DNA of 64,000 bases, from NCBI GenBank assembly GCA_002269645.1, contig NIVC01001238.1:62001-126000 (forward strand), read 5' to 3'. This stretch comes from Macrostomum lignano (taxonomy: Eukaryota). The notes beneath the pieces were generated by a model. It saw only the letters and a program-made list of their open reading frames with translations, did no database searches and was not told the DNA's origin. Made by a program: the position numbers and the translations under genes. The stretch's first letter is position 1. Every line of letters starts with the position of its first letter. This document shows, piece by piece, positions 25,673-64,000 of the stretch.

Positions 25673-38932
<13,260 letters not shown>

Positions 38933-43238: not shown

Positions 43239-45468
43239 ATATATTGGTTTACCGACAGACATTCAGACAGACATTCAGAAATCGTTCATTAAATGTTTAA
43301 CAAAATTGTCTATTTATTACGCAAGATACTGTGAATTTATAGAAACTTTTACGCATGTCTCTTCTTTAAAAAGACACCTCAGACACATACAAAGATGCTT
43401 TACAAGCTGATATATTCCCTAGCAACTGTTGTTACAACGTTTCCCAATGTACCAAATATTGTATGTAGTAGTTTTGTGAGAAGCCACTATATCGTCCCAC
43501 TTTGGTCTTTCTGCATGAAATTTGCACAGCTGTTTTACGCATGTCTTTGCTTTAAAAAGACACCTCAGACACACACAAAGATGCTTCATAAGCTGAGATA
43601 TTCCCTAGCAAATGTTGTTACAACATTTTCTAAAAATACTGAATGTATTATTATTACAATATTATTAATACTATTATTGAAATTATTACTATTAATAATG
43701 ATAATAAGATTATTAAAATCATATTACTGTATTCCTTTTATTACTATATAATAATATTACTGTTCTATTATTAACAGTAGAACAGGGAATCCCCCACCCC
43801 TGACATAATTTTTTATGCGCCGACATGGAGCAATGTGGGCACACAAAATTCAAGAACATGAGCTTACTTTTTGCTACGCACCTCAAACAAGAATCAAGTT
43901 GTCGCCAGCCCTCTGAACTGTCGAGATATTCAATGATTCTGCCTGTAGATGGTCGGATTTTTCCCATAAGCACTAGTGTATTACACCCTGTGCGCCAATA
44001 AGCACTGCGCCTCAGTGCAGCCTTGCCAAGTCTCCAAATTTTGTCAGCACATGTGTCTGCATCAGATTTATTTGACTTTGTTGGTCACTAGCCTTCACCC
44101 AGGTAAAGCTTCTGGACATTCAACAAGTTGCAACAGGTGTCTACATGTATATGGGCACGCTGTTCAATTTCTCAGCTAGTTTCGCTGATCAAGCCTTGAT
44201 AGAGTGGGCAAGCCTCAACTGCTCGACATCCTCAGCTATAGTCTCTTGAGCATTCATTCATCACCCAGACGCCGTCGGTACCTTCAGCGGATTACACCAG
44301 CTGACTATGGACAGTCTGATGCAAATATGCTAGATTTTTTATCTAGCTTCAATAATTGGCAAACCTCAACTGCTAGGCATCCTTAACTAGTTTCTCAATA
44401 ATTCTGTCATCATTCTGCCATCATCGGCACCTTCAAGGAGACAAAACCATGACCATGGACACCCAGAAGTATGATTTTTTTAAACAAATAGTAACTTTTA
44501 AGACAGAAGGCTTGGATATTTACTATATTGTGACTTTATCTTCATTCCACATAGAAAATTTGGTAATTTTTAGTGCTTTCTTCTTTTCGTGAATATTCTG
44601 TTCAATTTAGTTTAATTAACAAATTACCTCATCATGTTTACATAATTATGTGATTATAGACTGTTTGGGACTCTAGCTGAGAATAAACAGGAGTTACAGA
44701 TTGCGCATTATTGAAGCTTGATAAGAAAAACCTGACATAGTTGCAAAAGGATGTCCATAGTCATCTGATGCCACCTGTTGAAGGTGCCGACGGTGTTGGA
44801 GTGGTGACGGAATGCTCGAGAGACTACTTGAGGGTGTCCAAAAGTTGAGGCTTGCTCCCTGTTGAGGCTTGATCGGCAAAACTCAAGAAATTTGTATCAG
44901 GGTGGTCACAGTTGCCTGGTGTCATTTGTTGAAGATGCCGATGGTGTCCGGGTTATGACTAAATGCTTAGGAGACTAGCTGAGGATACCTAGCAGTTGAG
45001 GTTTGCCCACTGTCGAGGCTTGATCAGTGATCAGCGATGTCTAGGCTGAACTACTATATACATTTTTGGTTTATTGGGAAACGTTGTAACAACAGTTGCT
45101 AGGGAATATCTCAGCTTGTGAAGCATCTTTGTGTGTGTCTGAGGTGTCTTTTTAAAGAAGAGACATGCGTAAAACAGCTGTGCAAATTTCATGCAGAAAG
45201 ACCAAAGTGGGACGATGTAGTGGCTTCTCAAAAAACTACTAAATACAGTATTCGGTATATTAGGAAACATCGTAACAACAGTTGCTAGGAAATATCTCAG
45301 CTTGTGAAGCGTCTTTGTGTGTGTCTGAGGTGTCTTTTTAAAGAAGAGACATGCGTAAAAGTTTCTATAAATACACAGTATCTTGCGCAAAAAATAGAAA
45401 ATTTTGTTAAACATTTATTGAACGATTTCTGAATGTCTGTCTGAATGTCTGTCGGGAAACCAATACAT
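43239..45468. mobile_element. Non-autonomous Mutator/Foldback-like DNA transposon (2230 bp, ~400-bp TIRs, 9-bp TSD)
   Basis: The left end ATATATTGGTTTACCGACAGACATTCAG.. mirrors the right end ..CTGAATGTCTGTCGGGAAACCAATACAT. Identical CATAATATA flanks at 43230-43238 and 45469-45477. TIRs contain a ~190-bp subrepeat; inner inverted ~150-bp subrepeats lie at 44165-44460 and 44690-45040. No transposase ORF. Confidence 0.9.
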
Positions 45469-46079
45469 CATAATATAGCACTTTAGTAACAAAAATTAGT
45501 CCTGGGATTTGGGCCCAATCCCAGGATTTTGGGATCCCAAGATCTCAGGATTGCAATCCTTAACTAATATACAATTGTTACCTATTTCTATTTAATGGGT
45601 TGAATGATCTCATTCATTCAAGAGAAATATTGTTAAATTGTTAATCATTCTTTGGCTAGGCTTATATAAATCATAACTGGCTAACATTGTCTTTTTATAC
45701 TATGTTTTTCTTAGCCTTATTATTTAATATTATACTTTTTATTATAGTAGATAGAAATAGGCCCCTAGTCAATAAATTAGTCTTTTACTTTCTTATGAGT
45801 ATTTTTTATAGTACTAAATAGAAACAACAAGCTGTTGAAACCCGCAGATTTTGAACCCGGGGAATTCCAATACCTGGAACTACTTTTGCATGTATTCTGA
45901 AATCTAAGGCCATACACAAACAAAAACTTGTTAATAGTTAGTAGGATAGAGGTAGACATAAAATGGAGCACATTCGTATAAAATTAGGGTTTGAGACATT
46001 GTTGGCTGTACTGCGCAGAATGTCAGGCAATGTCTGTCTGACTCTAAAACATATATTGCTAAACTCTGGTCTCTCCCTG

Positions 46080-46509
46080 ACTCTCCCTATGTCCCTTGGA
46101 TCCTTTAAAATTTCTATTGTCTCTTTGTTTCCTCTCATCTCTCTCATCCCTTGTCTCTCCTCTCTCCCCTCTTCTCTCGTATCTTCCCTCATCTCTCTTC
46201 TCTTTCATCTCTCTTATCTCATCTCTTCCTTATTCTTTTCTCTCTCCTCTCCTCTCTCCTCTCTACTTTTTCGTTTTCTCTCTCCTCTCCTCTCTCCTCT
46301 CTCCTCTCTCCCCCTCTCCTCTTTCCTCTCACCCCCTCTTCTCTCTTATCTTCCTTCTCCTTTCTATTATTTTCTCTCTTCTCTTAACTCTCTCCTCTAC
46401 TCTCTCATCTCTCCCCTCTTCTCTCGTCTCTTTCCTCACCTCTTTTCTCTCTCGTCTTTGCTCTCTCATCTTTCCTTTCTCTTCTTTTATCTTTTCTCTC
46501 TTATCTCTC

Positions 46510-46602
<93 letters not shown>

Positions 46603-47270
46603 TCCATTCTCCTCTTTCCTCTCCTCTCTCCTCACTCACTTCTCTACCTTTGTCTCTCCTCTCTCCTCTCGTCTCTGTAACCTCTCCTCTGTTCTCTCTA
46701 CTCTCCCATCTTTTATCTGTTCACTCTCGTATCTGCTCTCTCATCCCCTGGCATCTCTGTCTTATATGTTCTCTCACCTCTCCTCTATACTCTTTTCTTT
46801 CCCCTCTTTAGACTCCTCACTTTCCTTTCTCCTTTCTCCTTTTCTCTTCTCTTACCTTTTCTATACTCTGTCTCCCTCTCTTCTCTCACTCTACTCTCCT
46901 CTCTCCGTTATCTCTCATCTCTCATTTCTCATCTCTCCTTCCACCTCTCTCATCTCTACAACCTTAGAGATGTAGAGATGTATCTTTATCTCTTCTCTCT
47001 TCCGTTTACTCTCTCATCTCTTCTTTCACCTGTTTCCTCTCTGCTCTCCTCTCTGCTGTCTCCTCTCTCCTCTCACCTGCAGCTCTCTGCTCTTTCATCT
47101 CTACTCTCCTCTCGCTTTCCTCTCTCCCCTCTTCTCCCCCTCTCTCTCATCGTCCTCACCCCCTCATCTCTCCTATTATATTTTATCTTTTCTTTTATCC
47201 CTCTGTCGCCTCTCCTCTCTTCGAATCGTCTATTCCTTCTTCTTTCCACTTTCATCTGCCCCTCAGCTAT
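46080..47270. repeat. CT-rich low-complexity tract including a (CT)n core
   Basis: Near-pure pyrimidine composition. Confidence 0.93.
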
Positions 47271-48059
47271 GAGCTGGATTCTTTATCTGGCCTTTGAGGT
47301 AAAAGTCTGCCTATCTCTACTTGGAAAGCCAGTTTGTGGGACGTAGTACTCTCATGGTTGTTTTCATGCTTTGATCACGTCATCTTTCTTGCAAATTTGC
47401 AGCCTTGAAAGGAATTTGTGTATCTTCAGCTCCACTGCAGTCTGCATCAGTCTAACAACCAAGGAAATATGCATTTCTTAGGAGGCCATTTAATATTTAC
47501 ACAGTACCTTTAAAAGAAACCTAAAATTTCCATGGTGTGCCTAATTTAGTAGGGTTGTATTGCATTGCATCGCATTGCCTTTTCATAAATCTTTCGCTTT
47601 TACAAACCATGCTGGATAGTGGATTCCCTCGATTTGCCAATTGCCATCCACTGTTAAACTGCTGCAGAGTTTGCCAATACAGAGGGGAGGGCAGTGGTTA
47701 GAATTTCTCACTTAACTGTTATGGCTAAACGTAGCCTCTCTACTCTCGGGGTGCGAGATTGCGAGAAGACTATAAATAAAGTTATTTCAAAACACTACAT
47801 ACATTTGCTATGTACATTCAGTCCTATCGCCTGACCCTTTGTCTGGCTCTGGGGGAATGAGTGAGTGAGTGGCACAAACAACAGAAAAAGCAGACAAACT
47901 TCACATGCTTACAGTTTCTTTTTCGGTTGAGTTACAGAGTTGAAACTTTACATTTAGATAGAGAATGAGTCAATGAAGAATTGTGTCAAGTTTGAAGTCA
48001 ACTGCTTTACATGGAGCAAACTTATGGCAGCTGAAAGTTAGTCAATTTTGAAACCCTTT

Positions 48060-48488
48060 TACACATCTGGGCCCAGATTGGGAAAGAGAGGCAGGCGGGC
48101 GGAGGTTGGGGTGGTTGCTACGCTGAAAAAAACAGCCTAACTTTAAAAGTGCACAGCACCGCTCAGGATTAACTTCGAGACTCGAAATTTTACACGATTG
48201 TGCCAAAATAGTTCAAGATTGTCTGTGTCAAATTTGAAGAGAATCGGTAGAAGTGAAGCGGCACTATAGAGGATTTAGTGAAAAAATCGCGCATTTTGAG
48301 CAGTTTTTTGTACTTTTAGGTAGGAAGACTTGAGTCTAGGAAATTAAAAGGTAGCCTAAGACATTCTCCATAGTAAGTTTAGGGTGGGTGTAAAGTTTGG
48401 TGTCATTTGGTTGAGCGGTTTGGGAGTCCATAGCGATCAAAATTGTCCACAGACAGACACACAGAGTTTTGATTTTTATAGGTAGAGA
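48060..48488 (-). mobile_element. Possible non-autonomous Helitron-type (Lep1/HINE-like) element, 5' part
   Basis: The minus strand reads A|TCTCTACCTATAAAAATC..TGTGTCTGTCTGT..CCGCTCAACCAAATGACACCAAACTTT, which resembles the TC 5' terminus, TCTG repeat and body of small invertebrate Helitron derivatives. No CTAG 3' end was found. Confidence 0.4.
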
Positions 48489-49965
48489 TTTGGGATAAGA
48501 TTGAAATGCCAAACATTTCTAAGGCAATAGTAAGTTACATTTTAAATATTTTAAGTACAAGGCCTAATATAATAAGTTTGGCATAAAGTTATGATTTATT
48601 GAATAAGTTATAATTTAATTGATATTAGTCTATTAAATTATTATTTTATTAAGCATCTAAGATAAGCAACTTTGCAATTTCCTATTCTAAAATATTTATA
48701 TAAGTTACTTTGCCTTTTCTATTATTTTTTGATGCCAATATTAGTTATAATCATTTACTAATAATAGAGCTATAAATAGGAGTTTATATTAAGGCCTATA
48801 ACCTATTTTTATGTTTATATATATATATATTTATAATAGCTAACTAATAAATTTCTTACAACTTACAACTTTTATTTCAATAATATTAAATCTAATCATA
48901 TTAGACAATAATTGTTTAATTTATCAATCATTAATAATATATCATTGCTTTTTTATTTTATAAAAGCTTTAAAAATAAAAAATATTAAAGTCTATAAATT
49001 TTCTATTGCTTTACTTTTATTCATCAAATATATAGCTCTAATATTCCTTTTGAGTCTTAAGTTCTTAAAGAGATTGAGTGGATATTAAGCTTGTTTCTGT
49101 TTTTTAGCTTTTGATAAATATTTATAAACTCAATGACTATATATCTTCTATCTTTTTACACTATTGGATCTCTGACAGAGAAGTTGCAGAAGTCTATAGG
49201 TTCTATGTTTATAGATTAGTCAAATTTATAACTGATTTAAGCCATATAATTATGAACTTATTGATATTTCAAATACAACATAAATGACAGAAAATGGAAT
49301 TAGGCCTTGAAAAATCATGGTGCCAATTGGGTATCTGGGGTCCAAATTCAGGATGCCAACAATTAAAGTGAATGTGGCATGACATAGTTGGCACAAGAAA
49401 CCTAGCTATTATCTGTCCTATTCTATCTTATGAAAGGACTAGAAAAGAATATATTAGCAAAAAAGTTTTTTTCCAATGTACAACCCATACCCATTGGAAA
49501 TGGTGACTAGAATCACTAGAGTCATTGCAAACAACCATGCTTGGAAACAAACAACTCATTAGCAACTCTATGAAGACTCTTGTAATCCAACAAAGGCAAC
49601 TATTAAGTCACAAGCGCATCACATGAGTTGCAGAATCCTAAGAGTCTCAAAAAGTTGTACAAGCATTTTGTTGGCGCTTAACTTTCCACTAACTCAAGTA
49701 GACTTGAGTTTTTATAAGCGCAAAGTTCGATTCTAATTCATAAAGTGGTGCAGGTGTGCTTTAGAAGCAACTCAGTGATTCTACAGCAACTCTGGCATGC
49801 CTCAAATACAACTAGAAAACTAGAGTCACTTCTTTCCTATTTTACCTGTGTTATCTGCAGCAACTCTGGGACGCTATTTGGTCTAGGTACCGGGATCTGT
49901 GCACTACTTGTTCATCCTTTTACATTAGTAGTATAAACGCGCATTAATAGTCAGCATTGTGTTGC

Positions 49966-51959
49966 ATGGCTGCCCTGTCCAAATCCGGCGTCTTTATTGT
50001 CGCCGCTAAGCGAACGCCGTTCGGCGCATTCGGCGGCGCGCTCAAGGACCACTCGGCCACCGACTTGGCCGAGACGGCGGCCCGCGCCGCGCTAGAGGCC
50101 AGCGGCGCTCCGAAAGACACCATCGGCTCCGTGGTGTTCGGCAACGTCATCCAGAGCCACCGGGACACTGCCATGCTGTCGCGCCACGTGGCCGTCCGCC
50201 TCGGCCTGCCGATCTCAACGCCGGCTTTCAACGTCAACCGGCTGTGCGGCTCCGGCTTCCAGTCCGTGGTCAGCGCCACCAACGAGATTCTTCTGGGCGA
50301 CAGCGAAGTCTCCATCGCTGGCGGCTCGGAGAGCATGAGCGGCACCCCCTACGCAGTCTGGGGCGTCCGGTTTGGCACGAAGTTCGGCACCGACTACGAG
50401 TTGACGGACCTGCTGTGGCACGGCCTGATCGATAAGCAGATCAAAACTCCCATGGGCGTCACGGCCGAGAATCTGGCCGAGAAATTCCAGCTGACCAGGA
50501 AGGAGTGCGACGAGTTCGCCGTGGTCAGCCAGGACAGATGGCAGAAGGCCAACGCTGACGGCGCCTTCAAAGCCGAGATTGTGCCCATGCAGGTGCGAAT
50601 TCTTGGCCATTTGGGAAATGGGATCTATTCGAGCTAGATAGTAAATGGATTAAATCTGAGACTTGGGATTAGTGGTCTGGGAATTAGGATTAAGGGTCCT
50701 GGAATTGGGATTTGGGGTCTGGGAATTGGGATTAAGGGTCCTGGAATTGGGATTTGGGGTCTGGGAATTGGGATTAGCGGTCTGGGAATTTGGATTAGGG
50801 GTCTGGGAATTGGGATTAAGGGTCCTGGAATTGGGATTTGGGGTCTGGGAATTGGGATTAGCGGTCTGGGAATTTGGATTAGGGGTCTGGGAATTGGGAT
50901 TAAGGGTCCTGGAATTGGATTAGGGGTCTGGGAATTGGGATTAAGGGTCCTGGAATTGGGATTAGGGGTCTGGGAATTGGGATTAAGGGTCCTGTAATTA
51001 GGATTAGGGGTCTGGGAATTTGGATTAGGGGTCCTGGAATTGGGATTAAGGGTCCTGGAATTGGGATTAGGGGTCTGGGAATTGGGATTAAGGGTCCTGG
51101 AATTGGGATTAGGGGTCTGGGAATTTGGATTAGGGGTCTGGGAATTTGGATTAGGGGTCTGGGACTTGGGATTAAGGGTCCTGGAATTGGGATTTGGGTC
51201 TGGGAATTGGAATTGTGTCTGGGAATTGGGATTAGGGGTCTGGGAATTGGGATTAGGAGTCTGGGAATTCGGTCTAAGGTCTAACACTTGGTGTTAGGAA
51301 GATAGGACTTGGAGTTAGCAATACAGGTCTCATAATTAGGAATTTGGATTCAATTGATTTCCTATCCCCCATGCCCCCCCCCTACTCCCCAGGTCAAGGG
51401 CAAGAAGGGCCCCACAGAGTTCGCCGTAGACGAGCACCCGCGCGCGGCCACGGTAGAGACCATGGCCAAGCTGCCGCCCGTGTTCAAGAAGAACGGCGTT
51501 GTCCACGCCGGCAACGCGTCCGGCATCTGCGACGGAGCCGCCGCCCTGGTGCTGGCCTCCGAGGCGGCCCTGAAGCGGCACAGCCTGAAGCCGCTGGCTC
51601 GCCTAGTCGGCTATCATTTCGTTGGCTGCGACCCCAGCATCATGGGCATCGGGCCCGTGCCCGCGGTGCAGGGCCTGCTGGCCAAGACTGGCCGCAGCCT
51701 CGCCCAGGTCGACCTTGTCGAAGTCAACGAAGCCTTCGCGCCGCAGTACCTGGCCGTTGAGCGGCAGCTCAGCCTGGACCGCGCCATCACCAACGTCAAC
51801 GGCGGCGCCATCGCCCTCGGCCATCCGGTCGGCGCCAGCGGCAGCCGGATCATGGCGCACCTGGCTCACGAGCTGCACAGGCGCGACAAGAAGCTGGCAA
51901 TCGGTTCGGCTTGTATTGGAGGCGGTCAGGGCATCGCCATCATGATTGAGCGGTGCTGA
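49966..51959 (+). CDS. ACAA2: Mitochondrial 3-ketoacyl-CoA thiolase (397 aa, 2 exons)
   Basis: Exons 49966-50592 and 51393-51959 (GT-AG, phase 0). Motifs GVFIVAAKRTPFGAFGG, NRLCGSG (catalytic Cys), EVNEAFA, NGGAIALGHP and SACIGGGQG. Confidence 0.96.
50660..51270. repeat. G-rich ~21-bp minisatellite (GGGATTAAGGGTCCTGGAATT / GGATTAGGGGTCTGGGAATT)n in the ACAA2 intron
   Basis: Tandem periodicity; several units contain TTAGGG. Confidence 0.93.
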
Positions 51960-52084
51960 CAGTCTGATTAAAAACCTTGCTGATTGATTGATTGATTGAT
52001 TGCTTTTTAATTGTGTAACATCTTTTGGATTTCAATTGTTGACTATGAATCGATTTTTTCTATTTGATTTATTCGATTAGTAAT

Positions 52085-52345
52085 CGCATAGCAACGGGAG
52101 ATTTCAAGCACTTAGCAACCGCATAGCAACCGGATTAAGAGCCTAGCAACCGCACAGCAACCGGCTTAAGAGCCTAGCAACCGGATTAAGAGCCTAGCAA
52201 CCGCATAGCAACGGGCTTATGAGCCTAGCAACCGCACAGCAACCGGCTTAAGAGCCTAGCAACCGCATTGCAACCGGCTTAAGAGCCTAGCAACTAGCAA
52301 CCCCTGTCTCACACAACCGGCTTAAAAGCTAAGCAACCGCATAGC
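52085..52345. repeat. Tandem repeat built on the TAGCAACC core between ACAA2 and TOPBP1
   Basis: ~12 TAGCAAC copies plus variants in 11/20/31-bp units. Confidence 0.9.
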
Positions 52346-52870
52346 CTTGGGAAAGTATGAATTAAACTATAAAATGCTGTGAATCGGTCTACTTTTGCCA
52401 TTGCGCCTCTGTCAGTGATGTTATTATGTCAAAAAATTTTGTTCCTAGCTTTTAATTCACGTAGTTTTTGCCATCCTATTCATCCAATTTCCCATTCTGT
52501 TATTGTACGTTGAAACAGCATTAATTGCTTGATACATTTGACATCGCAATTTTCATGAACAATATGTAATTGAGCAAGTTTAAGTTACAAACGGTTGAAA
52601 GTCATTTTATTGCCCTTCGTGTTGGGCTTTGATTGCTATTCATAGTAATTATTAAGATTATAATAACCAACCTCTGCTTTCTTTTATTTATTGTCAGAAA
52701 ATAGTTCAGTTTACTATTTAGGCTACTATAAGTAAAAATGAAAGAATTTTACTTTAAAATTTGGTCAGTCAAAGTAAAAAAATAGCGCTTTAATTTTTCA
52801 CTTGCAGCTTTCTGACCAGAGCGAAGCCAAAGTGAATTCCAAGGCAGATACAACAGCGCGATCCAATCCG

Positions 52871-55800
52871 ATGGGCCTGTCCGGGAAGCAACAACAACAG
52901 CAGCAACAGAAACCGCCGTCATCGACTTCTTCGTCGGCAATGTCGACGGCTTCGTCGGCCGCGGCGGCCAGCCTAGGCACCGTGTACTTTGTTGAGCCAA
53001 CTGGCGGCAGTCGGCACGGCCTGCTGCGCGAGGCCTTCAGCCTGCTGGATGGGGAGCCCAGCTGCTCGGCCGTCTGGCTGCCGGAGGCTCAGGTGCCATC
53101 GGTGCTGGCCAAGCATCAGCAGCGGTCTGGCGGCTCCGGCCGGGCCTACTTCGTATTCGATGACTTCCAGGGCGCCGCCTACGAGAGAGCGGCGGCCGCG
53201 CCTGGCTGCCGGCTGTTCGGCGCCCAGCTGCTGCTGCAGTACCTGCGCGATGACTTGCCGCTGCCCAAGTGGGAGGTGCCGCTGTTCTCCGCCGCGCTCA
53301 AGGATTTGCAGGCAAGTTTTGTGGGGTGCGGCGAGCTCCATGTGAGGCTCTGATGATCTGCAGTTCGCGGCTCTGTATCTGGAGATTCTGTATCCGATAG
53401 AAGTGCGTGAAATGGTATTTAAGATAGTTCTGCAGTTGCTAGAGGCCCATACAGGCATTTTGCTCCGCAACGGGGAGGGGTAGAGGTATAAGCTGAATAA
53501 CTCCCAACTCCAATTGGTTAACTCCATCTCCATTAACCCCACTCCTCAACCGGCTGCTCCCCACTCCTCAACCTGCAACTCCCCACCCCTCAATCCAAAA
53601 CTCCCCACCCCTCATCCCGCAACTCCCCACCTCTCAATCCACAACTCCCCACCCCTCAACCCACAACTCCCCACCCCTCAACCCACAACTCCCCACCCCT
53701 CAACTTACAACTCCCCACCCCCTCAACCTGCTGCACCCCATCCTCAACCCGCAACTCCCCACCCCTCAACCCGCAACTCCCCGCCCCTCAACCTGCTGCA
53801 CCCCATCCTCAACCCACAACTCCCCACCCCCTCAACCTGCTGCACCCCATCCTCAACCCGCAACTCCCCACCCCTCAACCCACAACTCCCCACCCCTCAA
53901 CCCACAACTCCCCACCCCTCAACTTACAACTCCCCACCCCCTCAACCTGCTGCACCCCATCCTCAACCCGCAACTCCCCACCCCTCAACCCGCAACTCCC
54001 CGCCCCTCAACCTGCTGCACCCCATCCTCAACCCACAACTCCCCACCCCCTCAACCTGCTGCACCCCATCCTCAACCCGCAACTCCCCACCCCTCAACCC
54101 GCAACTCCCCGCCCCTCAACCTGCTGCACCCCATCCTCAACCCGCAACTCCCCGCCCCTCAACCTGCTGCACCCCACTCCTCAACCCGCAACACCCCACC
54201 CCTCAACTCGCGCAGATCTCCGTGTCGGGCATCGAGGACCGCGCCACCGTCAAGCGCAAGATCCGCATGCTGCACGGCAACTTCCAACCCGATTTAACTG
54301 ACGATGTCAACGTGCTCATAACTACCTGCACCAATTCGAAGAAGTACCTGGTTGCTAAGCAGTTCAACATTAAAGTGCTGCTGCCCGAATGGCTGGACGG
54401 CCTCCTGGCCTGGTCCCGCAGTCGCAGTGTCGTTGAGCCGTTCGGCCTGCCCGACTTCGCCCGCTACGTGGTGCCGCCATTTCACAATGTGACCGCCACC
54501 ACTACCAACTTTGAGCAGACCGAGAAGGACCTCATTCAACGGCTGGTGGTGAAAAACGGCGGCCGCTACACCGGCAACCTGGTGGTTGGCGAGTGCACCC
54601 ACCTCATCGTGGCCCGGCCAGTCGGTCAGAAGTACAACTACGCTCGGAATTGGAAAATCAACTGCGTCAGCCTGCAGTGGGTGGTGGACAGCGATCGCAA
54701 GCAGTGCTGCTTGGACATTGCCGACTATCTGGTGTCGGACGATGGCAAGAACCGCGCCGGCGCCAAGCCCGCCAACAGCTCCACGCCGGACAAGCAGCGG
54801 GTGCCGCTCAGCGGGAAGACCGCGCCCGATGTCAGCTGCCTGCTGGACCCGGACCGGTCCCGGGTCAACGAGACCGTGGCCAGCGTGCCCGGCGACCGCA
54901 GCGTCTGCTACCCGGTGTCCTCAACTGCCGCTTCAACAGCGTCCGCGCCGACTCCGCAGCCGCCTGTTTCGGCGGCATCCAGCGGCATCGACAAAGAGAA
55001 CAACTTCCGGATTCCAAATCCGCCGCAGCCTCAGCCGCTGGCTCCGCTGCGCGACCTGCGCCTGTTGATCGCCTGCTGCCGCGGTCAGCAAGCGGAGCTG
55101 CAGCGCCTGACATCCATGGCTCGCCAGCTTGGCGCCTCGCCAATCTCCGCCAGTTCGAATCAACGCGTTGTCGAAGCGGACGCAGGCCTGATCATCGAGC
55201 CGGATCAGCTGGAGGATTTACCGGCTGGGGTTCAGTGCGGCGTGCTGGTTGCCAAGCAGTGGCTGCTTGACTGCTCCGAGAAGCAGCAGCGCCTGCCGTT
55301 TGACGCCTACAAACTGCTTTGGCGGCAGCCGGCAGCGGCAGATGAGGCGCATGAAACTGGGGACAGCACCATGGGCCCCGGCGATGCTGCGCCTGCTGCT
55401 GCCGCCGCTCCACCGGCGTCCGACATGCTGGAGGAAAGCCTCAACATCCTGTGTGACTATGTCAGGGAAGAGGAGTCCCAGCTCAAGCAGCAGGAGCAGC
55501 AGGCTGCTGAGCAGGACGATGAAGAAGGAGATGAAACTGAACTGCCGCCGGTTCGCTCTGTGGTGGACAACAATTCCACAGCTGCCAATGTGCTGCCAGA
55601 GACTGAGGAGCCCGCTAACAGCTCCACAGCCGCCGACACGCAGAGCTTCCTGACTGGCCGTCGCGTCGGCATCCTCGGTCTGGAGCCGGCCGCCGCCGCG
55701 GTCGCCGCCCGCAGTGTTACCCGCCTTGGCGGCCAGGTCGCCTCCGCAGCCGCTGCCGAAGCTACTCAGCTGGACTTGGCCGTGCTGCCAGTTGTCTATC

Positions 55801-58800
55801 AGCGAGGCAGCGGCGGGGCCACCGAGGCCGGCCTGCTGTCAGCCGACGAGCTGGTGACCGACGCCTGGCTTGCCGACTGCATTGACGGCCCGGCCGTGAT
55901 GGTGGCGGACCCAGACTCGGAGCCTTGGTACCGGCCCTGCGTGCTGTCCGCCACAGCCTCCAAGCCGCTGGCCGGCGTGGTGCTCTGCGTCAGCGGCTTC
56001 GAGCTCCGCGATCGGGAGCGCGTGACCACCCTGGGCCGCGGCCTCGGCGCCATCGTCCAGGAGAACCTCAGCCGCGTCAGCAAGCCCGACCGCCAGCTGC
56101 GGGTCACCACTCACCTGGTGCTGGCGGCCAGCGGGGGCCACAAATACTCGGCCGCAATGGGCTGGGGCAGCGTGCACTGCGTCACCAAGCACTGGCTGGG
56201 CGAGTGCGGCCGTCAGGGCCGCCGACTACCCGAGGCTGAGTTCCACATCGACTCGCTGGCCGATTACGAGGAGCGAAAACGGCGCGAAGCTGCAGCCGCC
56301 GCCGCTTCGGCCATGTCGGCGACAATGTCCTCGGCTGCGGATACCCCAACGGCTACGGCTGTTGCCATGGTGACGTCGACGATGGCGTCCGACTGCGTTG
56401 TTCCGGCCAGTCAGCCGTCCCCGATGCAGCAGCGGCAGCCGGCGAATCCGCACCGGGCGGCCATGGATAGCCCGAGCGTGTTTCTCAACAGCGGCTATCG
56501 GCCGCGCTTTGACCTGCAGGCGCTGAGCGCCGCCCTGCGCAGCCCGGTGCCGGGGCCGCCGGCCGGCACGCCGGACTCGGTTCAGTACGCCCGCGCCAGG
56601 CGCAACATCCGCCAGACCTGCCGGGCGCAGGGCAAACGCGAGCTGCTCGTCCTGCTGCCGCCGCCGTCCTCAGCGGCTGCCATCGGCGGCTCAGCCAACT
56701 CCGCGGCCGCGACGGCCGCCGACGCTAACGGCGACTTCGCCACGCCGCAGACCCCGCAGCAGGCGGCCGGCTTGCTATCGGGCGTCACCGTCTACCTGTC
56801 CGCCCGCCTTGGCGCCCAGCGGTCCCGCCTGGCCCAGCTGGCCGAGTCTCTCGGCGCCAGGTCGCGCTGGCAGTGGGACCCGCGCACCTGCACCCACCTG
56901 GTTGCCGAGGGGCCGCCGTCTGATGATCCCGAGCTGCAGCGGGCGATGCAGCCGCAGCCGGCCGCCACTGCCTCGGCGCCTCCGCCCCGACTGGTCAGCC
57001 CGGCCTGGCTGCTGCAGTGCAAGCGGCTGCGACGCCGGCTTGACGAGCGCGACTATCCGCCTGCGTCCGCCTTATCTGCCGCTGCCGCCCAGCCTCACGG
57101 GCAGCATCATCATCATCACAAGCACCATCACCATCACCATCAAGCGCATCAGGCTCAGCAGCTGGAGAGGCGAGCCTCCCGCGCCAGCCTGCAGGAGCTG
57201 AGCAGCAAGCTCGACTGCTTTGGCAAAGGCGCCGACAACTCACCCGACGGCGTATCCGGCGACGTAGCCGGAGCCAACGTAAACGACATCGGCGGCGCAT
57301 CCGCTGGCACCGGCGGCGGCGGCGGTACCGCGCCGGACAGCCGGCTGGCCCAGAATCGAGCCCGCCAGCTGCTGGAATCCGAGCCGGACGAGTCCGCCGT
57401 CTGCGTCGGTGGCGGCAGCGGCAGCGGCTCCGACGCCCGAGCAGCCGGCAAGGCCGCCACTGTCGCTTCCTCCGTTGCCGCCAACGCCGCTGCCGCCGCT
57501 ACGGCCGCCGTGCGACCCAACGAGCCGCTGCTGGTGGGCTGGCGCTACACCGACTCGGACGGAGCCGCGGCGGCGCCGCAACCGCCGCCTCCACAGCAGT
57601 CCGCGCCGCCCGAGCCGCCGCGCCTCTTCCAAATCACCGGCTTCAGCGCTCAGGTAAAGTTTTGCATTCCTTTTTGATGGGTCACATCTTGAGGATATAA
57701 AAGCATTTATTTCTAGGAATCAAGTTGAGATTTGTTTTAATTAGAGTGACAAAATAGCGCGAACTGTTTTTTGTATTGTCTCAGTAAGAAAATTCACCAA
57801 AAAAGCGCTGTTATTATTATTTAAAAGGACATGATGTACGCATGAGCGGGATGCACGCTTGGCTCAACGCAATTGACATAACGTGCGCTATTATTGTTTG
57901 TAGCATTATTAGTGATTATTCTAACCCAGGGGTCAGCAAACTCCAGCCAGAGGGTCATATGTGACCCGCAAAGCCTCTCTATCCGGCCCTCAGGTCTTTC
58001 GAAACTTTACAATAGCAATCCGGCCTGCTTAAGGTTTTTGTCTTCTCAGCTCTCTTCTCTCTCCTCTTCTCTTCTCTCTCCTCTCTCTTCTCCCATTTCT
58101 TCTCTCTTTTCTATTGTCTCTCCTCTCTGGCCCTTGAGGTTACGGAGAAAAGTTTTCCGAACCCTGTATTAATTAACCAATAGCACACCAGTAAGGCCTC
58201 AAGCATAATGCCGCTCCGGCAGGACCGGGACCGCCTTGTCAGCCAGATTCGCGGCCTGGGCGGCTCACTGGTCTCGGTGGAGTCCGAGGACCCCAGCCAC
58301 CTGGTCTGCGGCCGCCTGCTGCGCAACGAGAAACTCCTCCGCTGCGTTGCCGCCGGCCGCTGGGTCCTCCGGCCTGCCTATGTTGAAGCCTCGGCCAAGG
58401 CCGGCCGCTGGCTGCCCGAGGAGCCGTACGAGTGGGGCGGCGGCGGCGCTGAATCTGCGGACGCCGAGACCCGCCTTCTGGCCGCCGCCTGCAGTCGGTG
58501 GCGCCAGCGTGGCGGGCGGGCCTTTCGCGACTGGCGCGCCGCCCTGCTGTGCCCGCCGGACAAGCTGGCCAGCTTCCGGCGCCTCCTGGAGGCCGGCGGT
58601 GGCCGAGTTGTGGCCGACGGGCCGCCCTATCCGGCCGCCGCCAGCGTCAGTCACGCCTTCTGCCAGCGCGGCAACTACGCCGGCTGCTCGGACACCCTGT
58701 CCGGCGCCGGCTCCCACCTGTCCTGGCTGAGAATCGACTTCATCGCCGCCCACCTGGTGGACGAGAAGCCGCCAGAGCCGGCCGCTTACCGGCTGCCGCA

Positions 58801-58957
58801 GGCGCGCAAGCGACAGCAGGTCGGCGGGCCGGCGGGCAGCAGCGGCGCAGCGGACGAGGACGACTTCAGCGACGCGACTTCGACCGCCTCCAGCGGCCGA
58901 GGCGGCGGCAGCGGCGGCGCGGCCACCAGATCTTCAAAGCGGATTCGGCGCCGCTAG
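52871..58957 (+). CDS. TOPBP1: DNA topoisomerase II-binding protein 1, multi-BRCT (~1537 aa, 3 exons)
   Basis: Exons 52871-53311 (GC donor), 54216-57653 and 58223-58957, all phase 0. Recognised: BRCT0, BRCT1/2 (PEWL; ECTHLIV..GQKYNYARNWKINCVSLQWVVDS), BRCT4/5 (PLAGVVLCVSGF..TTHLV..KYSAAMGWG..VTKHWL), BRCT6 and the C-terminal BRCT7/8 pair (RNEKLLRCVAAGRWVLRPAYVEAS). Confidence 0.92.
53525..54208. repeat. C-rich degenerate minisatellite (CCCCACCCCTCAACCCRCAACT)n in TOPBP1 intron 1
   Basis: Tandem periodicity with a ~180-bp higher-order duplication; it ends a few nt before the acceptor at 54215. Confidence 0.92.
57927..58166 (+). mobile_element. 240-bp hAT-like MITE in TOPBP1 intron 2
   Basis: Termini CAGGGGTCAGCAAAC and GTTTTCCGAACCCTG form imperfect inverted repeats of the CAGGG hAT/Charlie type. 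It holds about one copy of the 36-bp unit and a short CT tract. No exact TSD. Confidence 0.7.
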
Positions 58958-59847
58958 TATTTGTTATAATAATTGTCTATTATTATATTGGCGCGAATTT
59001 GACTGTCACCTTAAATTTATTTAAAGCTTGTCGCGTTTTAACTGAATGTGAGGACTTCTATTATATGACATTGGCTATCTTTTTTATAATTGGAATCATC
59101 TTTCCATTATTTTGCTGCTTCTGAAAGCTCAGATGCTTTGAAAAGTCTTAATTGCTTTTGTTGCTTTTATTTTATTCTTGAAAAAATTTGCCACAAAAAT
59201 TACTAATACAAACAGTTTATACACTACATAAGTTAGGCATTTTTATACATACCAGATCAGCTGTACTCGTTTACTTAGTACAAAGGCCGGTGCTACCGCT
59301 ATTTTTCTACAAGGCAATTCTCTGCTTCTATCTTGTTCTTGTCTTCTTTTGCTGCTTTTAGTAGTAGCTGTATTATTATTAATTTTTAACAGTTGGCATT
59401 TTCTCTCTTTTTGTTTATTGAATTTGTGCACTGGCACATCACCCTACTCATACTCATAGTAGACTTAATATGTCTATGCAATGCCAGTAATGCTATATTG
59501 AACCGGGCCAATGTCATTGCTATTTATTTCCCTAATATTTTTGCCTAATATGATAATTATTGTCTACGCAATTTCAATTCACAGCGCAGAACCTAATATT
59601 GTCATTTTTAAAATATTTTTTCTTTCATGTTGATTGTCACTAGTCACTTCAGGGCATATATAGACTACTAGGCTAGGCTAGAGATAGAGATGATTGACCG
59701 ATGAGTGACAGCTAGAGATGAGTGACAGATAGAGAAGAGGGACAGCTAGTGGTATACTAATATTAGGCTAGTAGTGTATCACCTCTGACAGCTTGTTGTA
59801 TCTAATTAAATATATGAAATGGATTTCTGTCGGTCCGTCACAGTGGG

Positions 59848-62800
59848 ATGCTGACCCGCCTCTGGCCAGCTGGCGGGGCCGGCAGCAGCGGCGCAGCTGG
59901 AGGCGGCAGCGGCTTCACAAGAGCTGCCAGGATTGTGCTGGCACCGCCAGACTTCCAGGTGAGCGAATGAAGGATTGATTTGTCCTTTGCATTACTGAAG
60001 AGCTGTCACTTATCTAGCTGTCATTCATCTAGCTGTCACTCATCTAGATGTCACTCATCTAGCTCTCATCACTCATCTAGCTGTCACTCATCTAGCTCTC
60101 ATCACTCATCTAGCTGTCACTCTTCTAGCTGTCACTAATCTAGCTCTCATCACTCATCTAGCTGTCACTCATCTAGCTCTCATCACTAATCTAGCTGTCA
60201 CTCATCTCATCCAGCTGTCACTCATCTAGCTGTCAATCATCTAGCTCTCATCACTCATCTAGCTCTCATCACTCATCTAGCTCTCATCACTCATCTAGCT
60301 CTCATCACTCATCTAGCTGTCACTCTTCTAGCTGTCACTAATCTAGCTGTCACTCATCTCATCCAGCTGTCACTCATCTCATCCAGCTGTCACTCATCTA
60401 GCTGTCAATCATCTAGCTGTCATCACTTATCTAGCTCTCATCACTCATCTAGCTGTCACTCATCCAGCTGTCACTCATCTAGCTCTCATCACTCATCTAG
60501 CTCTCATCACTCATCTAGCTGTCACTCTTCTAGCTGTCACTAATCTAGCTGTCACTCATCTCATCCAGCTGTCACTCATCTCATCCAGCTGTCACTCATC
60601 TAGCTGTCAATCATCTAGCTGTCATCACTTATCTAGCTCTCATCACTCATCTAGCTCTCATCACTCATCTAGCTCTCATCACTCATCTAGCTCTCATCAC
60701 TCATCTAGCTGTCACTCTTCTAGCTGTCACTCTTCTAGCTGTCACTCATCTAGCTGTCACTCATCTCATCCAGCTGTCACTCATCTCATCCAGCTGTCAC
60801 TCATCTAGCTGTCAATCATCTAGCTGTCATCACTTATCTAGCTGTCATCACTCATCTAGCTGTCACTCATCCAGCTGTCACTCATCTAGCTGTCACTCAT
60901 CTCTAGCTGTCACTCATCTAGCTCTCATCACTCATGTAGCTGTCACTCATCTATCTCTCATCACTCATGTAGCTGTCACTCATCTAGCTATCACTCATCC
61001 TGCTGTCCCTCATCCAGCTGTCATCCTAGCTACTCTCCCACCCCATCACCCCCAGGTGAATCCCAGCTTGCTAATCGACTCCTACCTGGAGTGGCCGGTT
61101 CGCCTGCTGGGCTCCCTGTCCGGTGTCCGCAGCAACCGGGACATCAGCAACCGGGCCTACCTGCTCAGCTTGGTGGACTCAATCGAGCGCGGCATTCGTG
61201 GCAGTCGCTCCCCGCCTGTAGACGCCATGCTCAGCCTGAGCGTCTCCGGCCTCCGTCTGGAGCGCCGCGTCCAGCCGCAGCAGCAGCAACAGCCACCGCA
61301 GCAGATGCCCGAGGTGCTGCTCCGAGTTCCCGTGTCCCAGCTGCTCTCTGTGGCCTACGTCAGGGACTCCGACAGGCACCTGCTCGCGCTGCACTACAGC
61401 CCGGATGCCAACGGAACCAGCCAGCTCTGCGCCATGTCCGTCCACGCCAGGATCCACGCTCAGGTGAGCAGTTGTGCGACACCGGTGCCAGATGACTGTG
61501 AGACACCGGTGATGGATTGCTGATGTGAGACACCGGTGATGGATTGCTGATGTGAGATACCGGTGATGGATTGCTAATGTGAGACACCGGTGATGGATTG
61601 CTGATGTGAGACACCGGTGATGGATGATGGATTGCTGATGTGTGAGACACCGGTGATGGATTGCTGATGTGAGACACCGGTGATGGATGATGGATTGCTG
61701 ATGTGTGAGACACCGGTGATCGATTGTTGATGTGAGACAGCGGTGATGGATTGCTAATGGGAGAAACGGGTGATTCATTGCTGATGTGAGACACGGGTGA
61801 TTGATTGCTGATGTGAGATACCGGTGATGGATTGCTAATGTGAGACAGCGGTGATGGATTGCTGATGTGAAATACCTGTTGTACATAATGAGACACCTGT
61901 TGTACATAATGAGACACCTGTTGTACATAATGGGACACCTGTTGTACATAATGAGACACCTGTTGTACATAATGAGACACCTGTTGTACATAATGAGACA
62001 CCTGTTGTACATAATGACACCTGTTGTACATAATGACACACCTGTTGTACATAATGACACACCTGTTGTACATAATGAGACACCTGTTGTACATAATGAG
62101 ACACCTGTTGCGGATACTCAGTCGCAGCTCAGTGATTCTACAACATTTGATCTTCCCCAACCCCTTCATCCTCTCAGGAGATCTGCGCGGTGGCCCGACA
62201 GCTGCTGCAGCTCGCCTACACGGAGGCCACTTTGGAATTCTTCGACCGCGCCCTCGGTGGCGCTGCTTCAACATCCGGCGGCGCCCCTTCGACATCCGGC
62301 GCCTCCGTGCTCGGCGGCGGCGGCCACAGCGGCAGCGGGGGCGGCAGCGGAGACAGCGGCAGGGCCGGCGGCGGCGGAGCCCGCACGGCAACGGACTCGA
62401 ACGCCACCCCGGTGACCTCGACAGCCAGCAGCCCCGTGATTGGCCGGCGCGACAACCCGCAGGAGGCGGTGAGCAGCCTCGCCGGCAGCCTGGCGTCCAG
62501 CCTGAGCCGCCAGGAGCTGGTCACGTTCGGGCAGCTGTTCCGTGCCTGGTCCTCCGGCGCCTCCTCCTTCGCTGGCAGCGTTCGGCCCCAGCTGGAGCGG
62601 CTGTTCCCGGCTGAGCGGAGCCACCTGCTGCTGGGCCTGCGGCCCTTCATCCCGGCCAGGGATCACCAGGCTTTCGATGAGTTTCTGCATGACCGCGGCC
62701 TTAGACCGACCGGTTACAGTCGCTCGGTGAGCATCGGGAGCACCGCCAGCAGCGTGCGAAGTCGGGACTCCAGCGAGGTCGATCTGGACCAGGCTCTCGG

Positions 62801-63500
62801 CTCCATCGTTGCTCAGGTGAGCCATCGGGGATGAGGATTTTGGGACTGAAATCTCTAAGTTCCCTGGCGGTTAAGAATATATCCGGTAGTCCCAATTCCG
62901 ACTCTAGAAGTCCCGATCCCGACTCCAGAAGTCCCGATAGAAGTCCCGATCCCGACTCTAGAAGTCCCGATCCCAACTCTAGAAGGGCCGATCCCGACTA
63001 GTAGTCCCGATCCCGACTCTAGTAGTCCCGATCCCGACTCTAGAAGTCCCGATCCCGACTCTAGAAGTCCAGTCCCGATAGAAGTCCCGATCCCGACTCT
63101 AGAAGTCCCGTTCCCAACTCTAGAAGGGCCGATCCCGACTAGTAGTCCCGATCCCGACTCTAGAAGGGCCGATCCCACCTTTGAGATTCTTTAAATCATG
63201 ATCCTGAATGTAAAAATCCCGAGTCGGAATTTCGAGAAGAATTGACCTTCATTTGTCCTTAACCTTTCCTCTCCCCAGGTGCAGCGGCTGGACATGAGCC
63301 AGCAGCAGTTTGCCCAGCCCAGCTACTCCCGCTCCGTGTCCGCCGCCTCCGCCTCAACTGCCGGCCGGTCGCCCGGACAGCCGCACAAGTACCTCGCGCT
63401 GGACGGACTCGAAGATTCCGCCTCCATGGTGGCGCCGGCGGACTCCGGGCGAAGTCCCGTCAAGGAGCTCTCGCCGATGGGTCACGCGCACAGATTCTAA
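59848..63500 (+). CDS. CCM2: Cerebral cavernous malformations 2 protein (malcavernin), PTB plus harmonin-homology domain (~459 aa, 4 exons)
   Basis: Exons 59848-59958, 61056-61463, 62178-62816, 63279-63500; GT-AG, phase 0. PTB (DAMLSLS..LLRVPVSQLLSVAYVRD..HLL), YTEATLEFFDRA, and HHD (LSRQELVTFGQL..LLLGLRPFIPARDHQAFDEFL). Confidence 0.92.
60005..61025. repeat. 15/18-bp minisatellite (CTCATCTAGCTGTCA)n in CCM2 intron 1
   Basis: Tandem periodicity with higher-order blocks. Confidence 0.95.
61495..62110. repeat. Two adjacent minisatellites in CCM2 intron 2: ~27-bp (GAGACACCGGTGATGGATTGCTGATGT)n, then 21-bp (GAGACACCTGTTGTACATAAT)n
   Basis: Tandem periodicity; both units share the GAGACACC core; the switch occurs near 61870. 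Confidence 0.93.
62890..63180. repeat. 21-bp minisatellite (AGAAGTCCCGATCCCGACTCT)n in CCM2 intron 3
   Basis: Tandem periodicity. Confidence 0.92.
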
Positions 63501-63509
63501 CTGGCCTTG

Positions 63510-63925
63510 CCGTCTGTTTATCCTTAATCCCGCTGTCTGTTTATCCTTAATCCCGCTGTCTGTTTATCCTTAATCCCGCTGTCTGTTTATCCTTAATCCC
63601 GATGTCTGTTTATCCTTAATCCCGCTGTCTGTTTATCCTTAATCCCGCTGTCTGTTTATCCTTAATCCCGATGTCTGTTTATCCTTAATCCCGCTGTCTG
63701 TTTATCCTTAATCCCGCTGTCTGTTTATCCTTAATCCCGCTGTCTGTTTATCCTTAATCCCGCTGTCTGTTTATCCTTAATCCCGCTGTCTGTTTATCCT
63801 TAATCCCGCTGTCTGTTTATCCTTAATCCCGATGTCTGTTTATCCTTAATCCCGCTGTCTGTTTATCCTTAATCCCGCTGTCTGTTTATCCTTAATCCTA
63901 CTGTATGTTTGTCCTTAATCCCTCT
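63510..63925. repeat. 23-bp minisatellite (TTATCCTTAATCCCGCTGTCTGT)n just after the CCM2 stop codon
   Basis: Tandem periodicity, ~17 copies. Confidence 0.95.
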
Positions 63926-64000
63926 GTCCGCTTATCCTTAATCCCCACTTACTCATCTCACTCTCCCATTATATCAATTTGAGGTGATCACTATAATTCA

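What the first reader, a model, noticed from the sequence alone, without database searches (positions are those of the whole stretch)
49955..63500. Candidate SL trans-spliced operon ACAA2-TOPBP1-CCM2
Seen: three same-strand genes with short AT-rich spacers. The ACAA2 stop at 51959 is 848 bp from an acceptor at 52807 (TTTTTCACTTGCAG). The TOPBP1 stop at 58957 is 886 bp from an acceptor at 59843 (CCGTCACAG, 4 nt before the ATG). ACAA2 also has TCAG shortly before its ATG. Established: spliced-leader trans-splicing occurs in flatworms, and operons have been described in Macrostomum. Inference: a polycistron linking beta-oxidation, replication checkpoint and CCM scaffold genes.
Basis: partly seen in the sequence, partly recalled or inferred. 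Interest (0 to 1): 0.7.

Follow-up and report, generated by a model that had tools for sequence, protein, structure and literature searches.

The report
Ordinary Macrostomum spliced-leader gene cluster
Three unrelated housekeeping genes of the flatworm Macrostomum lignano sit head to tail and each receives a spliced leader; the first two are already annotated as one transcription unit, so this is an ordinary example of a known kind of flatworm operon.

Summary
The window is Macrostomum lignano scaffold NIVC01001238.1 (record coordinate = window + 62000). It carries three same-strand genes: an ACAA2-like thiolase, a TOPBP1-like BRCT protein and a CCM2-like protein.

In the GenBank annotation all three coding regions are 5'-partial and begin at or within 4 nt of splice-acceptor-type sites. 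That fits gene 5' ends set from spliced-leader (SL) reads.

Thiolase and TOPBP1 carry the tags Mlig030250g1 and g2. By the authors' naming rule, they were cut from one assembled transcriptional unit. CCM2 (Mlig031042g1) is a separate unit. It meets the published distance rule of under 1 kb, but its co-transcription is not shown.

- The thiolase junction is at 49968|49969, not the TCAG at 49953.
- The annotated CCM2 junction is at 59829|59830, not 59843, where the SL's AUG would be out of frame.

The junction bases in this assembly look overwritten by SL-bearing RNA-seq reads during polishing.

About 15% of M. lignano genes are assigned to operons, so interest is low. I saw no RNA reads directly.

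The parts
41228..49968 (+). Upstream AT-rich intergenic region, shared with the divergent SPATA6-like gene. It should contain the promoter and the thiolase outron. The promoter was not located.
   Evidence: The nearest upstream annotated gene is on the minus strand, with its CDS start at 41227. G+C is 0.31-0.43. There is no convincing ORF, only a CT-rich tract and an inverted repeat.
49962..49968 (+). TTGCATG directly before the annotated thiolase CDS start. It is identical to the last 7 nt of the SL. It is probably a polishing artefact that masks a true TTTGCAG acceptor.
   Evidence: The GenBank CDS starts at GCT (49969) and omits the ATG. The protein derived from the older ML2 assembly reads LCLQ|AALSK, which back-translates to TTG TGT TTG CAG|GCT. 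The three copies differ only at these bases. Pilon polishing of this assembly used RNA-seq.
49969..51959 (+). ACAA2-like mitochondrial 3-ketoacyl-CoA thiolase (BOX15_Mlig030250g1, PAA70426.1). Exons 49969-50592 and 51393-51959. The intron is filled by a minisatellite of period 21.
51960..52807 (+). Spacer 1, 848 nt and 37% G+C. It holds the thiolase 3' UTR, a tandem repeat at 52113-52294 and the outron of TOPBP1. ATTAAA hexamers lie at 51967 and 52361.
52794..52807 (+). Trans-splice acceptor TTTTTCACTTGCAG. It is the only [T/C]TNCAG match in spacer 1.
   Evidence: The annotated 5'-partial CDS starts at 52811 in the window and exactly after the junction in copy L001. With this junction the SL AUG is in frame.
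52808..58957 (+). TOPBP1-like BRCT protein (BOX15_Mlig030250g2, PAA70427.1, 1557 aa as annotated). Exons 52808-53311, 54216-57653 and 58223-58957. The first intron is of the GC-AG type.
   Evidence: My model plus the 20-aa N-terminal extension matches PAA70427.1 exactly. BRCT domains are found by Pfam. Matches to TopBP1 structures are collinear.
58958..59829 (+). Spacer 2, 872 nt up to the annotated CCM2 junction and 33% G+C (measured over 58958-59843). It has no AATAAA. An ATTAAA lies at 59805. Positions 59681-59749 are an inverted copy of the CCM2 intron-1 minisatellite.
59824..59829 (+). Annotated CCM2 SL junction. It reads TTTCTG in the window and TTTCAG in sister copy L001. The A-to-T change at position -2 matches the SL's last bases.
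   Evidence: The CDS of PAA70428.1 starts at 59830 with SVRHSGM. An in-frame stop lies at 59815-59817. The copies are aligned. The SL AUG is in frame here.
59835..59843 (+). It is not the annotated junction, and the SL AUG would be out of frame.
59830..63500 (+). CCM2-like gene (BOX15_Mlig031042g1, PAA70428.1). Exons 59830-59958, 61056-61463, 62178-62816 and 63279-63500. All three introns hold minisatellites.

Best explanation
This is an ordinary Macrostomum lignano cluster of SL-trans-spliced genes.

The proposed mechanism is as follows.
1. RNA polymerase II starts somewhere in the 8.7 kb AT-rich region upstream of the thiolase. This step is inferred.
2. The thiolase outron is replaced by the 35-nt spliced leader at 49968|49969.
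3. The same precursor runs on through the 848-nt spacer.
4. The thiolase mRNA is cleaved and polyadenylated.
5. The leader is spliced onto TTGCAG|CTT at 52807|52808, releasing a capped TOPBP1 mRNA.

Thiolase plus TOPBP1 is therefore a two-cistron operon. This is shown only through the public annotation, not through reads that I saw.

CCM2 is also leader-spliced, at 59829|59830. It may be a third cistron, because it lies less than 1 kb from the TOPBP1 stop. It may equally have its own promoter in spacer 2. This point is undecided.

At every annotated junction the leader's terminal AUG is in frame with the ORF. For the thiolase it is probably the real start codon.

The three products are a beta-oxidation enzyme, a replication-checkpoint scaffold and a CCM scaffold. 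They have no functional link, as is usual for metazoan operons.
For: Source and annotation:
- The window is NIVC01001238.1 of assembly Mlig_3_7.
- All three GenBank CDSs are 5'-partial. They start downstream of an in-frame stop and 0-4 nt after acceptor-type sites. This is what the authors' TBONE pipeline plus TransDecoder yields when a 5' end is set by an SL-read peak.
- The SPATA6-like neighbour shows the same pattern after an intact CAACAG.

Co-transcription of genes 1 and 2:
- The locus tags are Mlig030250g1 and g2 in the window, g3 and g4 in the second copy, and g6 and g5 in the third.
- Genes that share a prefix were cut from one transcriptional unit (Wudarski 2017, Supplementary Fig. 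5a).

Spacing and arrangement:
- Both spacers are under the 1 kb repeat-adjusted threshold used to call operons in this species (PMC8629364). Spacer 1 is 848 nt, less 182 nt of tandem repeat. Spacer 2 is 872 nt, less 50 nt of tandem repeat.
- The flanking intergenic regions are 8.7 kb and 5.3 kb.
- No opposite-strand gene, tRNA or Rfam RNA lies in the spacers.
- The three genes are adjacent in all three genomic copies.

Splice sites and reading frame:
- The SL AUG is in frame at all three annotated junctions.
- The site at 52807 is the only [T/C]TNCAG match in spacer 1.
- SL-like 'footprints' (CATG or CTG in place of CAG) sit exactly at these junctions, in an assembly that was polished with RNA-seq.
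Against: - I inspected no SL-containing, poly(A) or 5'-end reads. All RNA evidence reaches me second-hand through annotation boundaries and names.
- CCM2 belongs to a different transcriptional unit (prefix Mlig031042).
- The spacers, about 0.85 kb from stop codon to junction, are far from the roughly 100 bp mode of operon distances. They lie towards the threshold that separates the two modes. They are AT-rich and long enough to hold a promoter.
- The annotated TOPBP1 start differs by 0, 3 and 9 nt among the three copies, so the boundaries are not exact.
- Transcriptional units built by StringTie with up to 1000 multimapping positions could be bridged by the repeat in spacer 1 or by low-level read-through.
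- In the window copy the CCM2 acceptor reads TG rather than AG. If that is real, this copy cannot use the site.
Confidence: 0.65

Rival explanations
1. The full three-gene polycistron. One promoter upstream of the thiolase drives ACAA2, TOPBP1 and CCM2, and CCM2 is released by trans-splicing.
For: - The genes are on the same strand. Spacer 2 is under 1 kb, so the trio meets the published operon rule provided CCM2 is SL-spliced.
- CCM2's annotated 5' end is of the SL type.
- The trio is adjacent in all three copies.
- An older ML2 gene model (A0A1I8IGQ1) fuses TOPBP1 and CCM2 through the same acceptor. One recent study treats such chimeras as signs of polycistronic precursors (PMC12582326).
- The only canonical poly(A) hexamer (AATAAA or ATTAAA) in spacer 2 is the ATTAAA at 59805, 25 nt before the junction.
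Against: - CCM2 has its own transcriptional-unit prefix in all three copies.
- The chimeric ML2 model follows a frameshift and uses a weak GTTATA donor. It is probably an ab initio artefact.
- The three copies are 97-99% identical everywhere, so shared synteny reflects recent duplication rather than selection.
Confidence: 0.4
2. Three independent genes. Each spacer holds its own promoter, and the leader is added to monocistronic precursors, as for about 60% of SL-spliced genes in this species. The shared unit name reflects read-through or assembly bridging.
For: - Only about 40% of SL-spliced genes are assigned to operons.
- The spacers are about 0.85 kb and AT-rich, far above the 100 bp mode.
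- In this species, regions of up to 2 kb upstream were sufficient as promoters for the genes tested.
- Multimapping-tolerant assembly and the tandem repeat at 52113-52294 could join the units.
Against: - The same thiolase plus TOPBP1 pairing under one prefix is seen for all three genomic copies.
- The authors report that units tend to split, not fuse, at repeat-rich intergenic regions.
- The cluster is much tighter than its flanks.
Confidence: 0.25

Closest known systems
Macrostomum lignano transcriptional units and operons (Wudarski et al. 2017, PMC5730564; Ustyantsev & Berezikov 2021, PMC8629364), for example unit Mlig030697.1 with genes g1 and g2
   Same: Same species, and the same single 35-nt leader ending in AUG. 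The layout is also the same: same-strand conserved genes, a [T/C]TNCAG acceptor, spacing under 1 kb, and two genes under one unit prefix. Two-gene operons make up 75% of those called.
   Different: The spacers, about 0.85 kb before UTR subtraction, sit in the upper tail rather than at the 100 bp mode. The third gene is not in the same assembled unit.
Caenorhabditis elegans SL2-type operons
   Same: A polycistronic precursor is resolved by 3' end formation coupled to trans-splicing. The genes are functionally unrelated housekeeping or growth genes.
   Different: M. lignano has one leader and no specialised SL2. C. elegans intercistronic regions are about 100 nt. No Ur-type element was sought or found here.
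Schistosoma mansoni UbCRBP-enolase polycistron and the operon candidates of parasitic flatworms (PMC12582326)
   Same: These are flatworm operons with a single-leader class. The same acceptor can be used in cis and in trans, and chimeric gene models serve as a hint of polycistrons.
   Different: Those studies use thresholds of 200-300 bp. The gene pairs differ. I could not test conservation of this pair outside M. lignano.
Flatworm leader 3'-terminal AUG used as the initiator methionine (Cheng et al. 2006, J Biol Chem 281:733; cited, content from my own knowledge)
   Same: The leader's AUG is in frame at all three junctions. For the thiolase it appears to be the only start codon.
   Different: This is inferred here from annotation and an older assembly. 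It was not tested by translation assays.

Membership tests
M. lignano SL-resolved operon (criteria of Ustyantsev & Berezikov 2021) | Adjacent genes on one strand, not interrupted by an opposite-strand gene | tested here: met
   Gene models and GenBank gene lists for the window and two sister copies. No gene-like ORF or RNA lies in the spacers.
M. lignano SL-resolved operon (criteria of Ustyantsev & Berezikov 2021) | Downstream gene 2 (TOPBP1) is SL trans-spliced | tested here: met
   The evidence is indirect. The 5'-partial CDS starts at 52811 in the window and exactly after the junction in L001. It lies downstream of an in-frame stop and next to the only YTNCAG in the spacer. One copy carries an SL-like CATG footprint. 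I did not see reads.
M. lignano SL-resolved operon (criteria of Ustyantsev & Berezikov 2021) | Downstream gene 3 (CCM2) is SL trans-spliced | tested here: inconclusive
   The annotated 5'-partial start is at 59830, directly after TTTCAG in copy L001. In the window and in L003 the site reads TTTCTG. This is either a polishing artefact or a real loss of the acceptor.
M. lignano SL-resolved operon (criteria of Ustyantsev & Berezikov 2021) | Repeat-adjusted intergenic distance below 1 kb | tested here: met
   Upper bounds measured from the stop codon are 848 nt and 872 nt. Subtracting tandem repeats removes 182 nt and 50 nt respectively. The poly(A) sites are unknown, so the true distances are shorter.
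M. lignano SL-resolved operon (criteria of Ustyantsev & Berezikov 2021) | Distance near the roughly 100 bp mode typical of operon pairs | tested here: not met
   From stop codon to junction, at least about 650-800 nt remains after repeat removal. This could reach the mode only if the 3' UTRs are long.
Polycistronic transcription unit (any SL operon) | One precursor RNA spanning genes 1 and 2 | tested here: met
   This rests on annotation only. The shared prefixes are Mlig030250g1 and g2, g3 and g4, and g6 and g5. The naming rule is stated in Wudarski 2017, Supplementary Fig. 5a.
Polycistronic transcription unit (any SL operon) | One precursor RNA spanning genes 2 and 3, and a single promoter | not testable with these tools
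   CCM2 has separate unit prefixes. No RNA-seq, RAMPAGE or T-fill data were reachable. No M. lignano transcript contigs were found in the protein collection.
C. elegans SL2-type operon | A specialised downstream leader (SL2) and an intercistronic region of about 100 nt | tested here: not met
   M. lignano has a single leader sequence. The spacers are about 0.85 kb.
ACAA2, TOPBP1 and CCM2 orthologues | Diagnostic domain architecture and best matches | tested here: met
   Thiolase_N and Thiolase_C, with 63-65% identity to mitochondrial 3-ketoacyl-CoA thiolases. Collinear matches to TopBP1 BRCT0-2, 4-5, 6 and 7-8. CCM2_C above the Pfam cutoff.

The most novel reading that the evidence does not exclude
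The cluster could be a 'hybrid' three-gene operon with unusually long intercistronic regions of about 0.85 kb. CCM2 would be made both from the polycistronic precursor and from an internal promoter in spacer 2. The inverted minisatellite copy at 59681-59749, which can pair with intron 1, would modulate use of the trans-splice acceptor. Separately, the thiolase would have no genomic start codon and would depend wholly on the leader's AUG.
Probability: 0.15. Interest if true: 0.35.

Novelty: new member of a known kind. Interest (0 to 1): 0.15.

Why it matters
As biology it matters little. SL-resolved operons are published for M. lignano, about 15% of its genes are assigned to them, and the thiolase-TOPBP1 pair is already encoded as one transcriptional unit in the public locus tags.

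Two practical points are worth passing on.
- In assembly Mlig_3_7 the bases just upstream of SL junctions seem to have been overwritten by leader-bearing RNA-seq reads during Pilon polishing. This destroys AG acceptors and, for the thiolase, creates a false genomic ATG. Anyone predicting trans-splice sites or start codons from this assembly alone will be misled.
- Anyone designing promoter constructs for TOPBP1 or CCM2 in this transgenic model needs to know whether the 0.85 kb spacers are promoters or intercistronic regions.

Tried and rejected
I went through homologue searches instead.
- The third and last homologue search, with the TOPBP1 N-terminus, returned only a fungal BRCT protein. Low-complexity words probably saturated the candidate list. 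An exact-sequence look-up rescued it.
- I hoped to find Logan RNA-seq contigs of M. lignano carrying the leader at their 5' ends. The 90% clusters hold only NCBI and UniRef members. The one Logan member, P0136 (43 aa), sits on contigs whose other called genes are unrelated to this locus.
- The leader sequence itself is not in the window.
- I searched for the gene names in full text and in the supplements of four papers. There were no hits, and the operon list is not held.
- Comparing spacers among the three genomic copies for signs of constraint failed. The copies are 97-99% identical everywhere, so there is no power.
- Poly(A) hexamer scanning cannot place the 3' ends.
- I rejected PAXIP1 as the identity of gene 2, although UniRef names the older model that way. 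The structure-sequence search gives TopBP1 across all BRCT blocks.
- I rejected TCAG at 49953 and CACAG at 59843 as the main acceptors.
Full report
**What is there**

The region has GC-rich exons separated by AT-rich or minisatellite-filled non-coding DNA. I rebuilt the three genes from the splice sites and obtained clean reading frames.
- Thiolase: exons 49966-50592 and 51393-51959, 397 aa.
- A BRCT-repeat protein: exons 52871-53311, 54216-57653 and 58223-58957, 1537 aa. Its first intron is of the GC-AG type.
- A CCM2-like protein: exons 59848-59958, 61056-61463, 62178-62816 and 63279-63500, 459 aa.

Pfam finds Thiolase_N and Thiolase_C, PTCB-BRCT and BRCT, and CCM2_C. The thiolase is 63-65% identical to animal mitochondrial 3-ketoacyl-CoA thiolases, that is ACAA2. 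The BRCT protein matches solved TopBP1 fragments BRCT0-2, 4-5, 6 and 7-8 in collinear order. TOPBP1 is therefore the right name, and the PAXIP1 label on an older UniRef model is wrong.

**Where it comes from**

The CCM2 and thiolase proteins match GenBank proteins of Macrostomum lignano at 100%. Fetching the encoding contigs showed that locus L002 is identical to the window from position 49830. The window is therefore NIVC01001238.1:62001-126000 of assembly Mlig_3_7, GCA_002269645.1.

Two further copies of the trio exist in that assembly: L001 on NIVC01000337.1 and L003 on NIVC01000916.1. In the two spacers they are 97-99% identical to the window copy. This agrees with the known recent duplications in this line.

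The next gene upstream is a SPATA6-like gene on the opposite strand, 8.7 kb away. The next gene downstream is Patched-like, about 5.3 kb beyond the CCM2 stop and outside the window.

**Evidence for leader trans-splicing**

According to its authors, the GenBank annotation rests on gene boundaries set by their TBONE pipeline. The pipeline uses peaks of leader-trimmed reads and poly(A) reads, and ORFs are then called by TransDecoder.

All three CDSs in all three copies are 5'-partial. In the window they start at 49969 (GCT, omitting the preceding ATG), at 52811 and at 59830.

Each start lies downstream of an in-frame stop: 49950, 52777 and 59817. A partial ORF of this kind can only arise if the transcript model begins within 2 nt of the CDS start.
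- For TOPBP1 that is 2-4 nt after the AG at 52806-52807. In copy L001 it is exactly the first base after the junction.
- For CCM2 in L001 it is exactly after TTTCAG.

The SPATA6-like gene shows the same pattern after an intact CAACAG.

The site at 52807 is the only match in spacer 1 to the published acceptor motif [T/C]TNCAG. The 35-nt leader ends in ATG. At every annotated junction that ATG is in frame with the ORF.

**Evidence for co-transcription**

An exact-sequence look-up showed that my TOPBP1 model, with 20 extra N-terminal residues, is PAA70427.1, locus tag BOX15_Mlig030250g2. The window's thiolase is Mlig030250g1. The other copies are g3 with g4, and g6 with g5.

[quoted passage not shown] Two unrelated proteins sharing a prefix in three copies therefore means the assembled precursor spanned spacer 1.

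CCM2 carries other prefixes: Mlig031042g1, Mlig011054g1 and Mlig026923g1. No assembled precursor spanned spacer 2.

Ustyantsev and Berezikov call an operon whenever leader-spliced neighbours on one strand lie less than 1 kb apart after repeat subtraction. The main mode of that distribution is near 100 bp. Both spacers pass the threshold but lie well above the mode.

An older ML2 gene model fuses TOPBP1 and CCM2 through the same CAG|TCG acceptor. It follows a frameshift and uses a weak donor, so I give it little weight.

The thiolase junction is not the TCAG at 49953.
- The annotated CDS begins at 49969.
- The protein predicted from the independent ML2 assembly reads LCLQ|AALSK. This back-translates to TTG TGT TTG CAG|GCT, a perfect acceptor with no genomic ATG.
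- In Mlig_3_7 the same bases read TTGCATG in two copies and TCTCATG in the third. These are the only differences among the copies in about 170 nt.

The same pattern appears at the other two junctions.
- At the TOPBP1 junction, copy L001 reads TCATG where the other two read TGCAG. These account for 3 of the 5 mismatches in 843 nt between L001 and L003.
- At the CCM2 junction, the window and L003 read TCTG where L001 reads TCAG.

In each case the change moves towards the leader's 3' end (GCATG). The assembly was polished with Pilon using RNA-seq mapped by STAR.

I infer that leader-bearing reads overwrote the last outron bases. This is an inference. It is supported by the clustering of differences and by their direction. 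It also serves as indirect evidence that leader reads end at exactly these positions.

It would also place the leader's AUG out of frame, at the head of a 320-aa overlapping ORF. If the TG at 59828-59829 is real in this copy, the site at 59843 remains a possible fallback.

**Verdict**

The thiolase plus TOPBP1 operon is already implicit in the public annotation. CCM2 is a plausible but unproven third cistron (about 0.4).
- Nothing here departs from what is published for this species. The functional mismatch of the three genes is normal for metazoan operons.
- I saw no RNA data directly. The listed read-mapping and RT-PCR checks would settle the matter.

Interest is low.

Noticed in passing
window 49962-49968 and 59828-59829; L001 2735-2741; L003 about 239-244: In 6 of the 10 annotated leader junctions I examined, the bases just upstream read ..TG (CATG or CTG) instead of AG. 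The leader ends in ..GCATG. Near-identical sister copies, or proteins derived from the older ML2 assembly, keep CAG. The assembly was Pilon-polished with RNA-seq, so these look like polishing artefacts. They destroy acceptors and create a false ATG for the thiolase.
   Followed up: partly
window 49966-49971: If the true sequence is TTTGCAG|GCT, the thiolase has no genomic start codon. The next in-frame Met is about 70 residues in, so the gene would depend on the leader's terminal AUG.
   Followed up: partly
window 59681-59749 versus 60001-61023: Spacer 2 holds an inverted copy of the 15-nt minisatellite that fills CCM2 intron 1. The predicted RNA duplex is -92.7 kcal/mol, against -42.6 +/- 5.0 for shuffles. 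In a precursor it would bracket exon 1 and the trans-splice site.
   Followed up: partly
window 50655-51269, 53537-54211, 60001-61023, 61497-62110, 62888-63176 and 63512-63945: All but one of the six introns in the three genes (the exception is TOPBP1 intron 2, which has only short CT-rich repeats) are largely filled by a minisatellite of its own, with periods of 15-27 nt. Another array begins 12 nt after the CCM2 stop. Array lengths differ among the three genomic copies.
   Followed up: no
window 53312-54215: The first TOPBP1 intron has a GC donor (CAG|GCAAGT). The model with this intron matches GenBank protein PAA70427.1 exactly.
   Followed up: yes
window 38932-41227, minus strand: A second head-to-tail pair runs away from the same 8.7 kb AT-rich region. 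It consists of a SPATA6-like gene, whose leader-type 5'-partial start follows CAACAG, and a 1066-aa gene without Pfam domains. That gene's CDS starts 1014 nt after the SPATA6 stop. This may be another operon candidate.
   Followed up: partly
L003 2944-6514 (NIVC01000916.1): The third copy of TOPBP1 is annotated as a truncated 888-aa protein with a frameshifted tail. It is either an assembly indel or a decaying duplicate.
   Followed up: no
UniRef A0A1I8IGQ1 (P0135): The older ML2-based model is a chimera of TOPBP1 and two tandem CCM2-like parts, and it is named PAXIP1. It ends with a second, diverged CCM2_C-like segment that is not present in the window's CCM2.
   Followed up: no
window 43395-43751 (+) and 45031-45414 (-): An inverted pair of related sequences lies in the upstream AT-rich region. 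It is seen as similar spurious ORF translations. It may be the ends of a transposable element.
   Followed up: no
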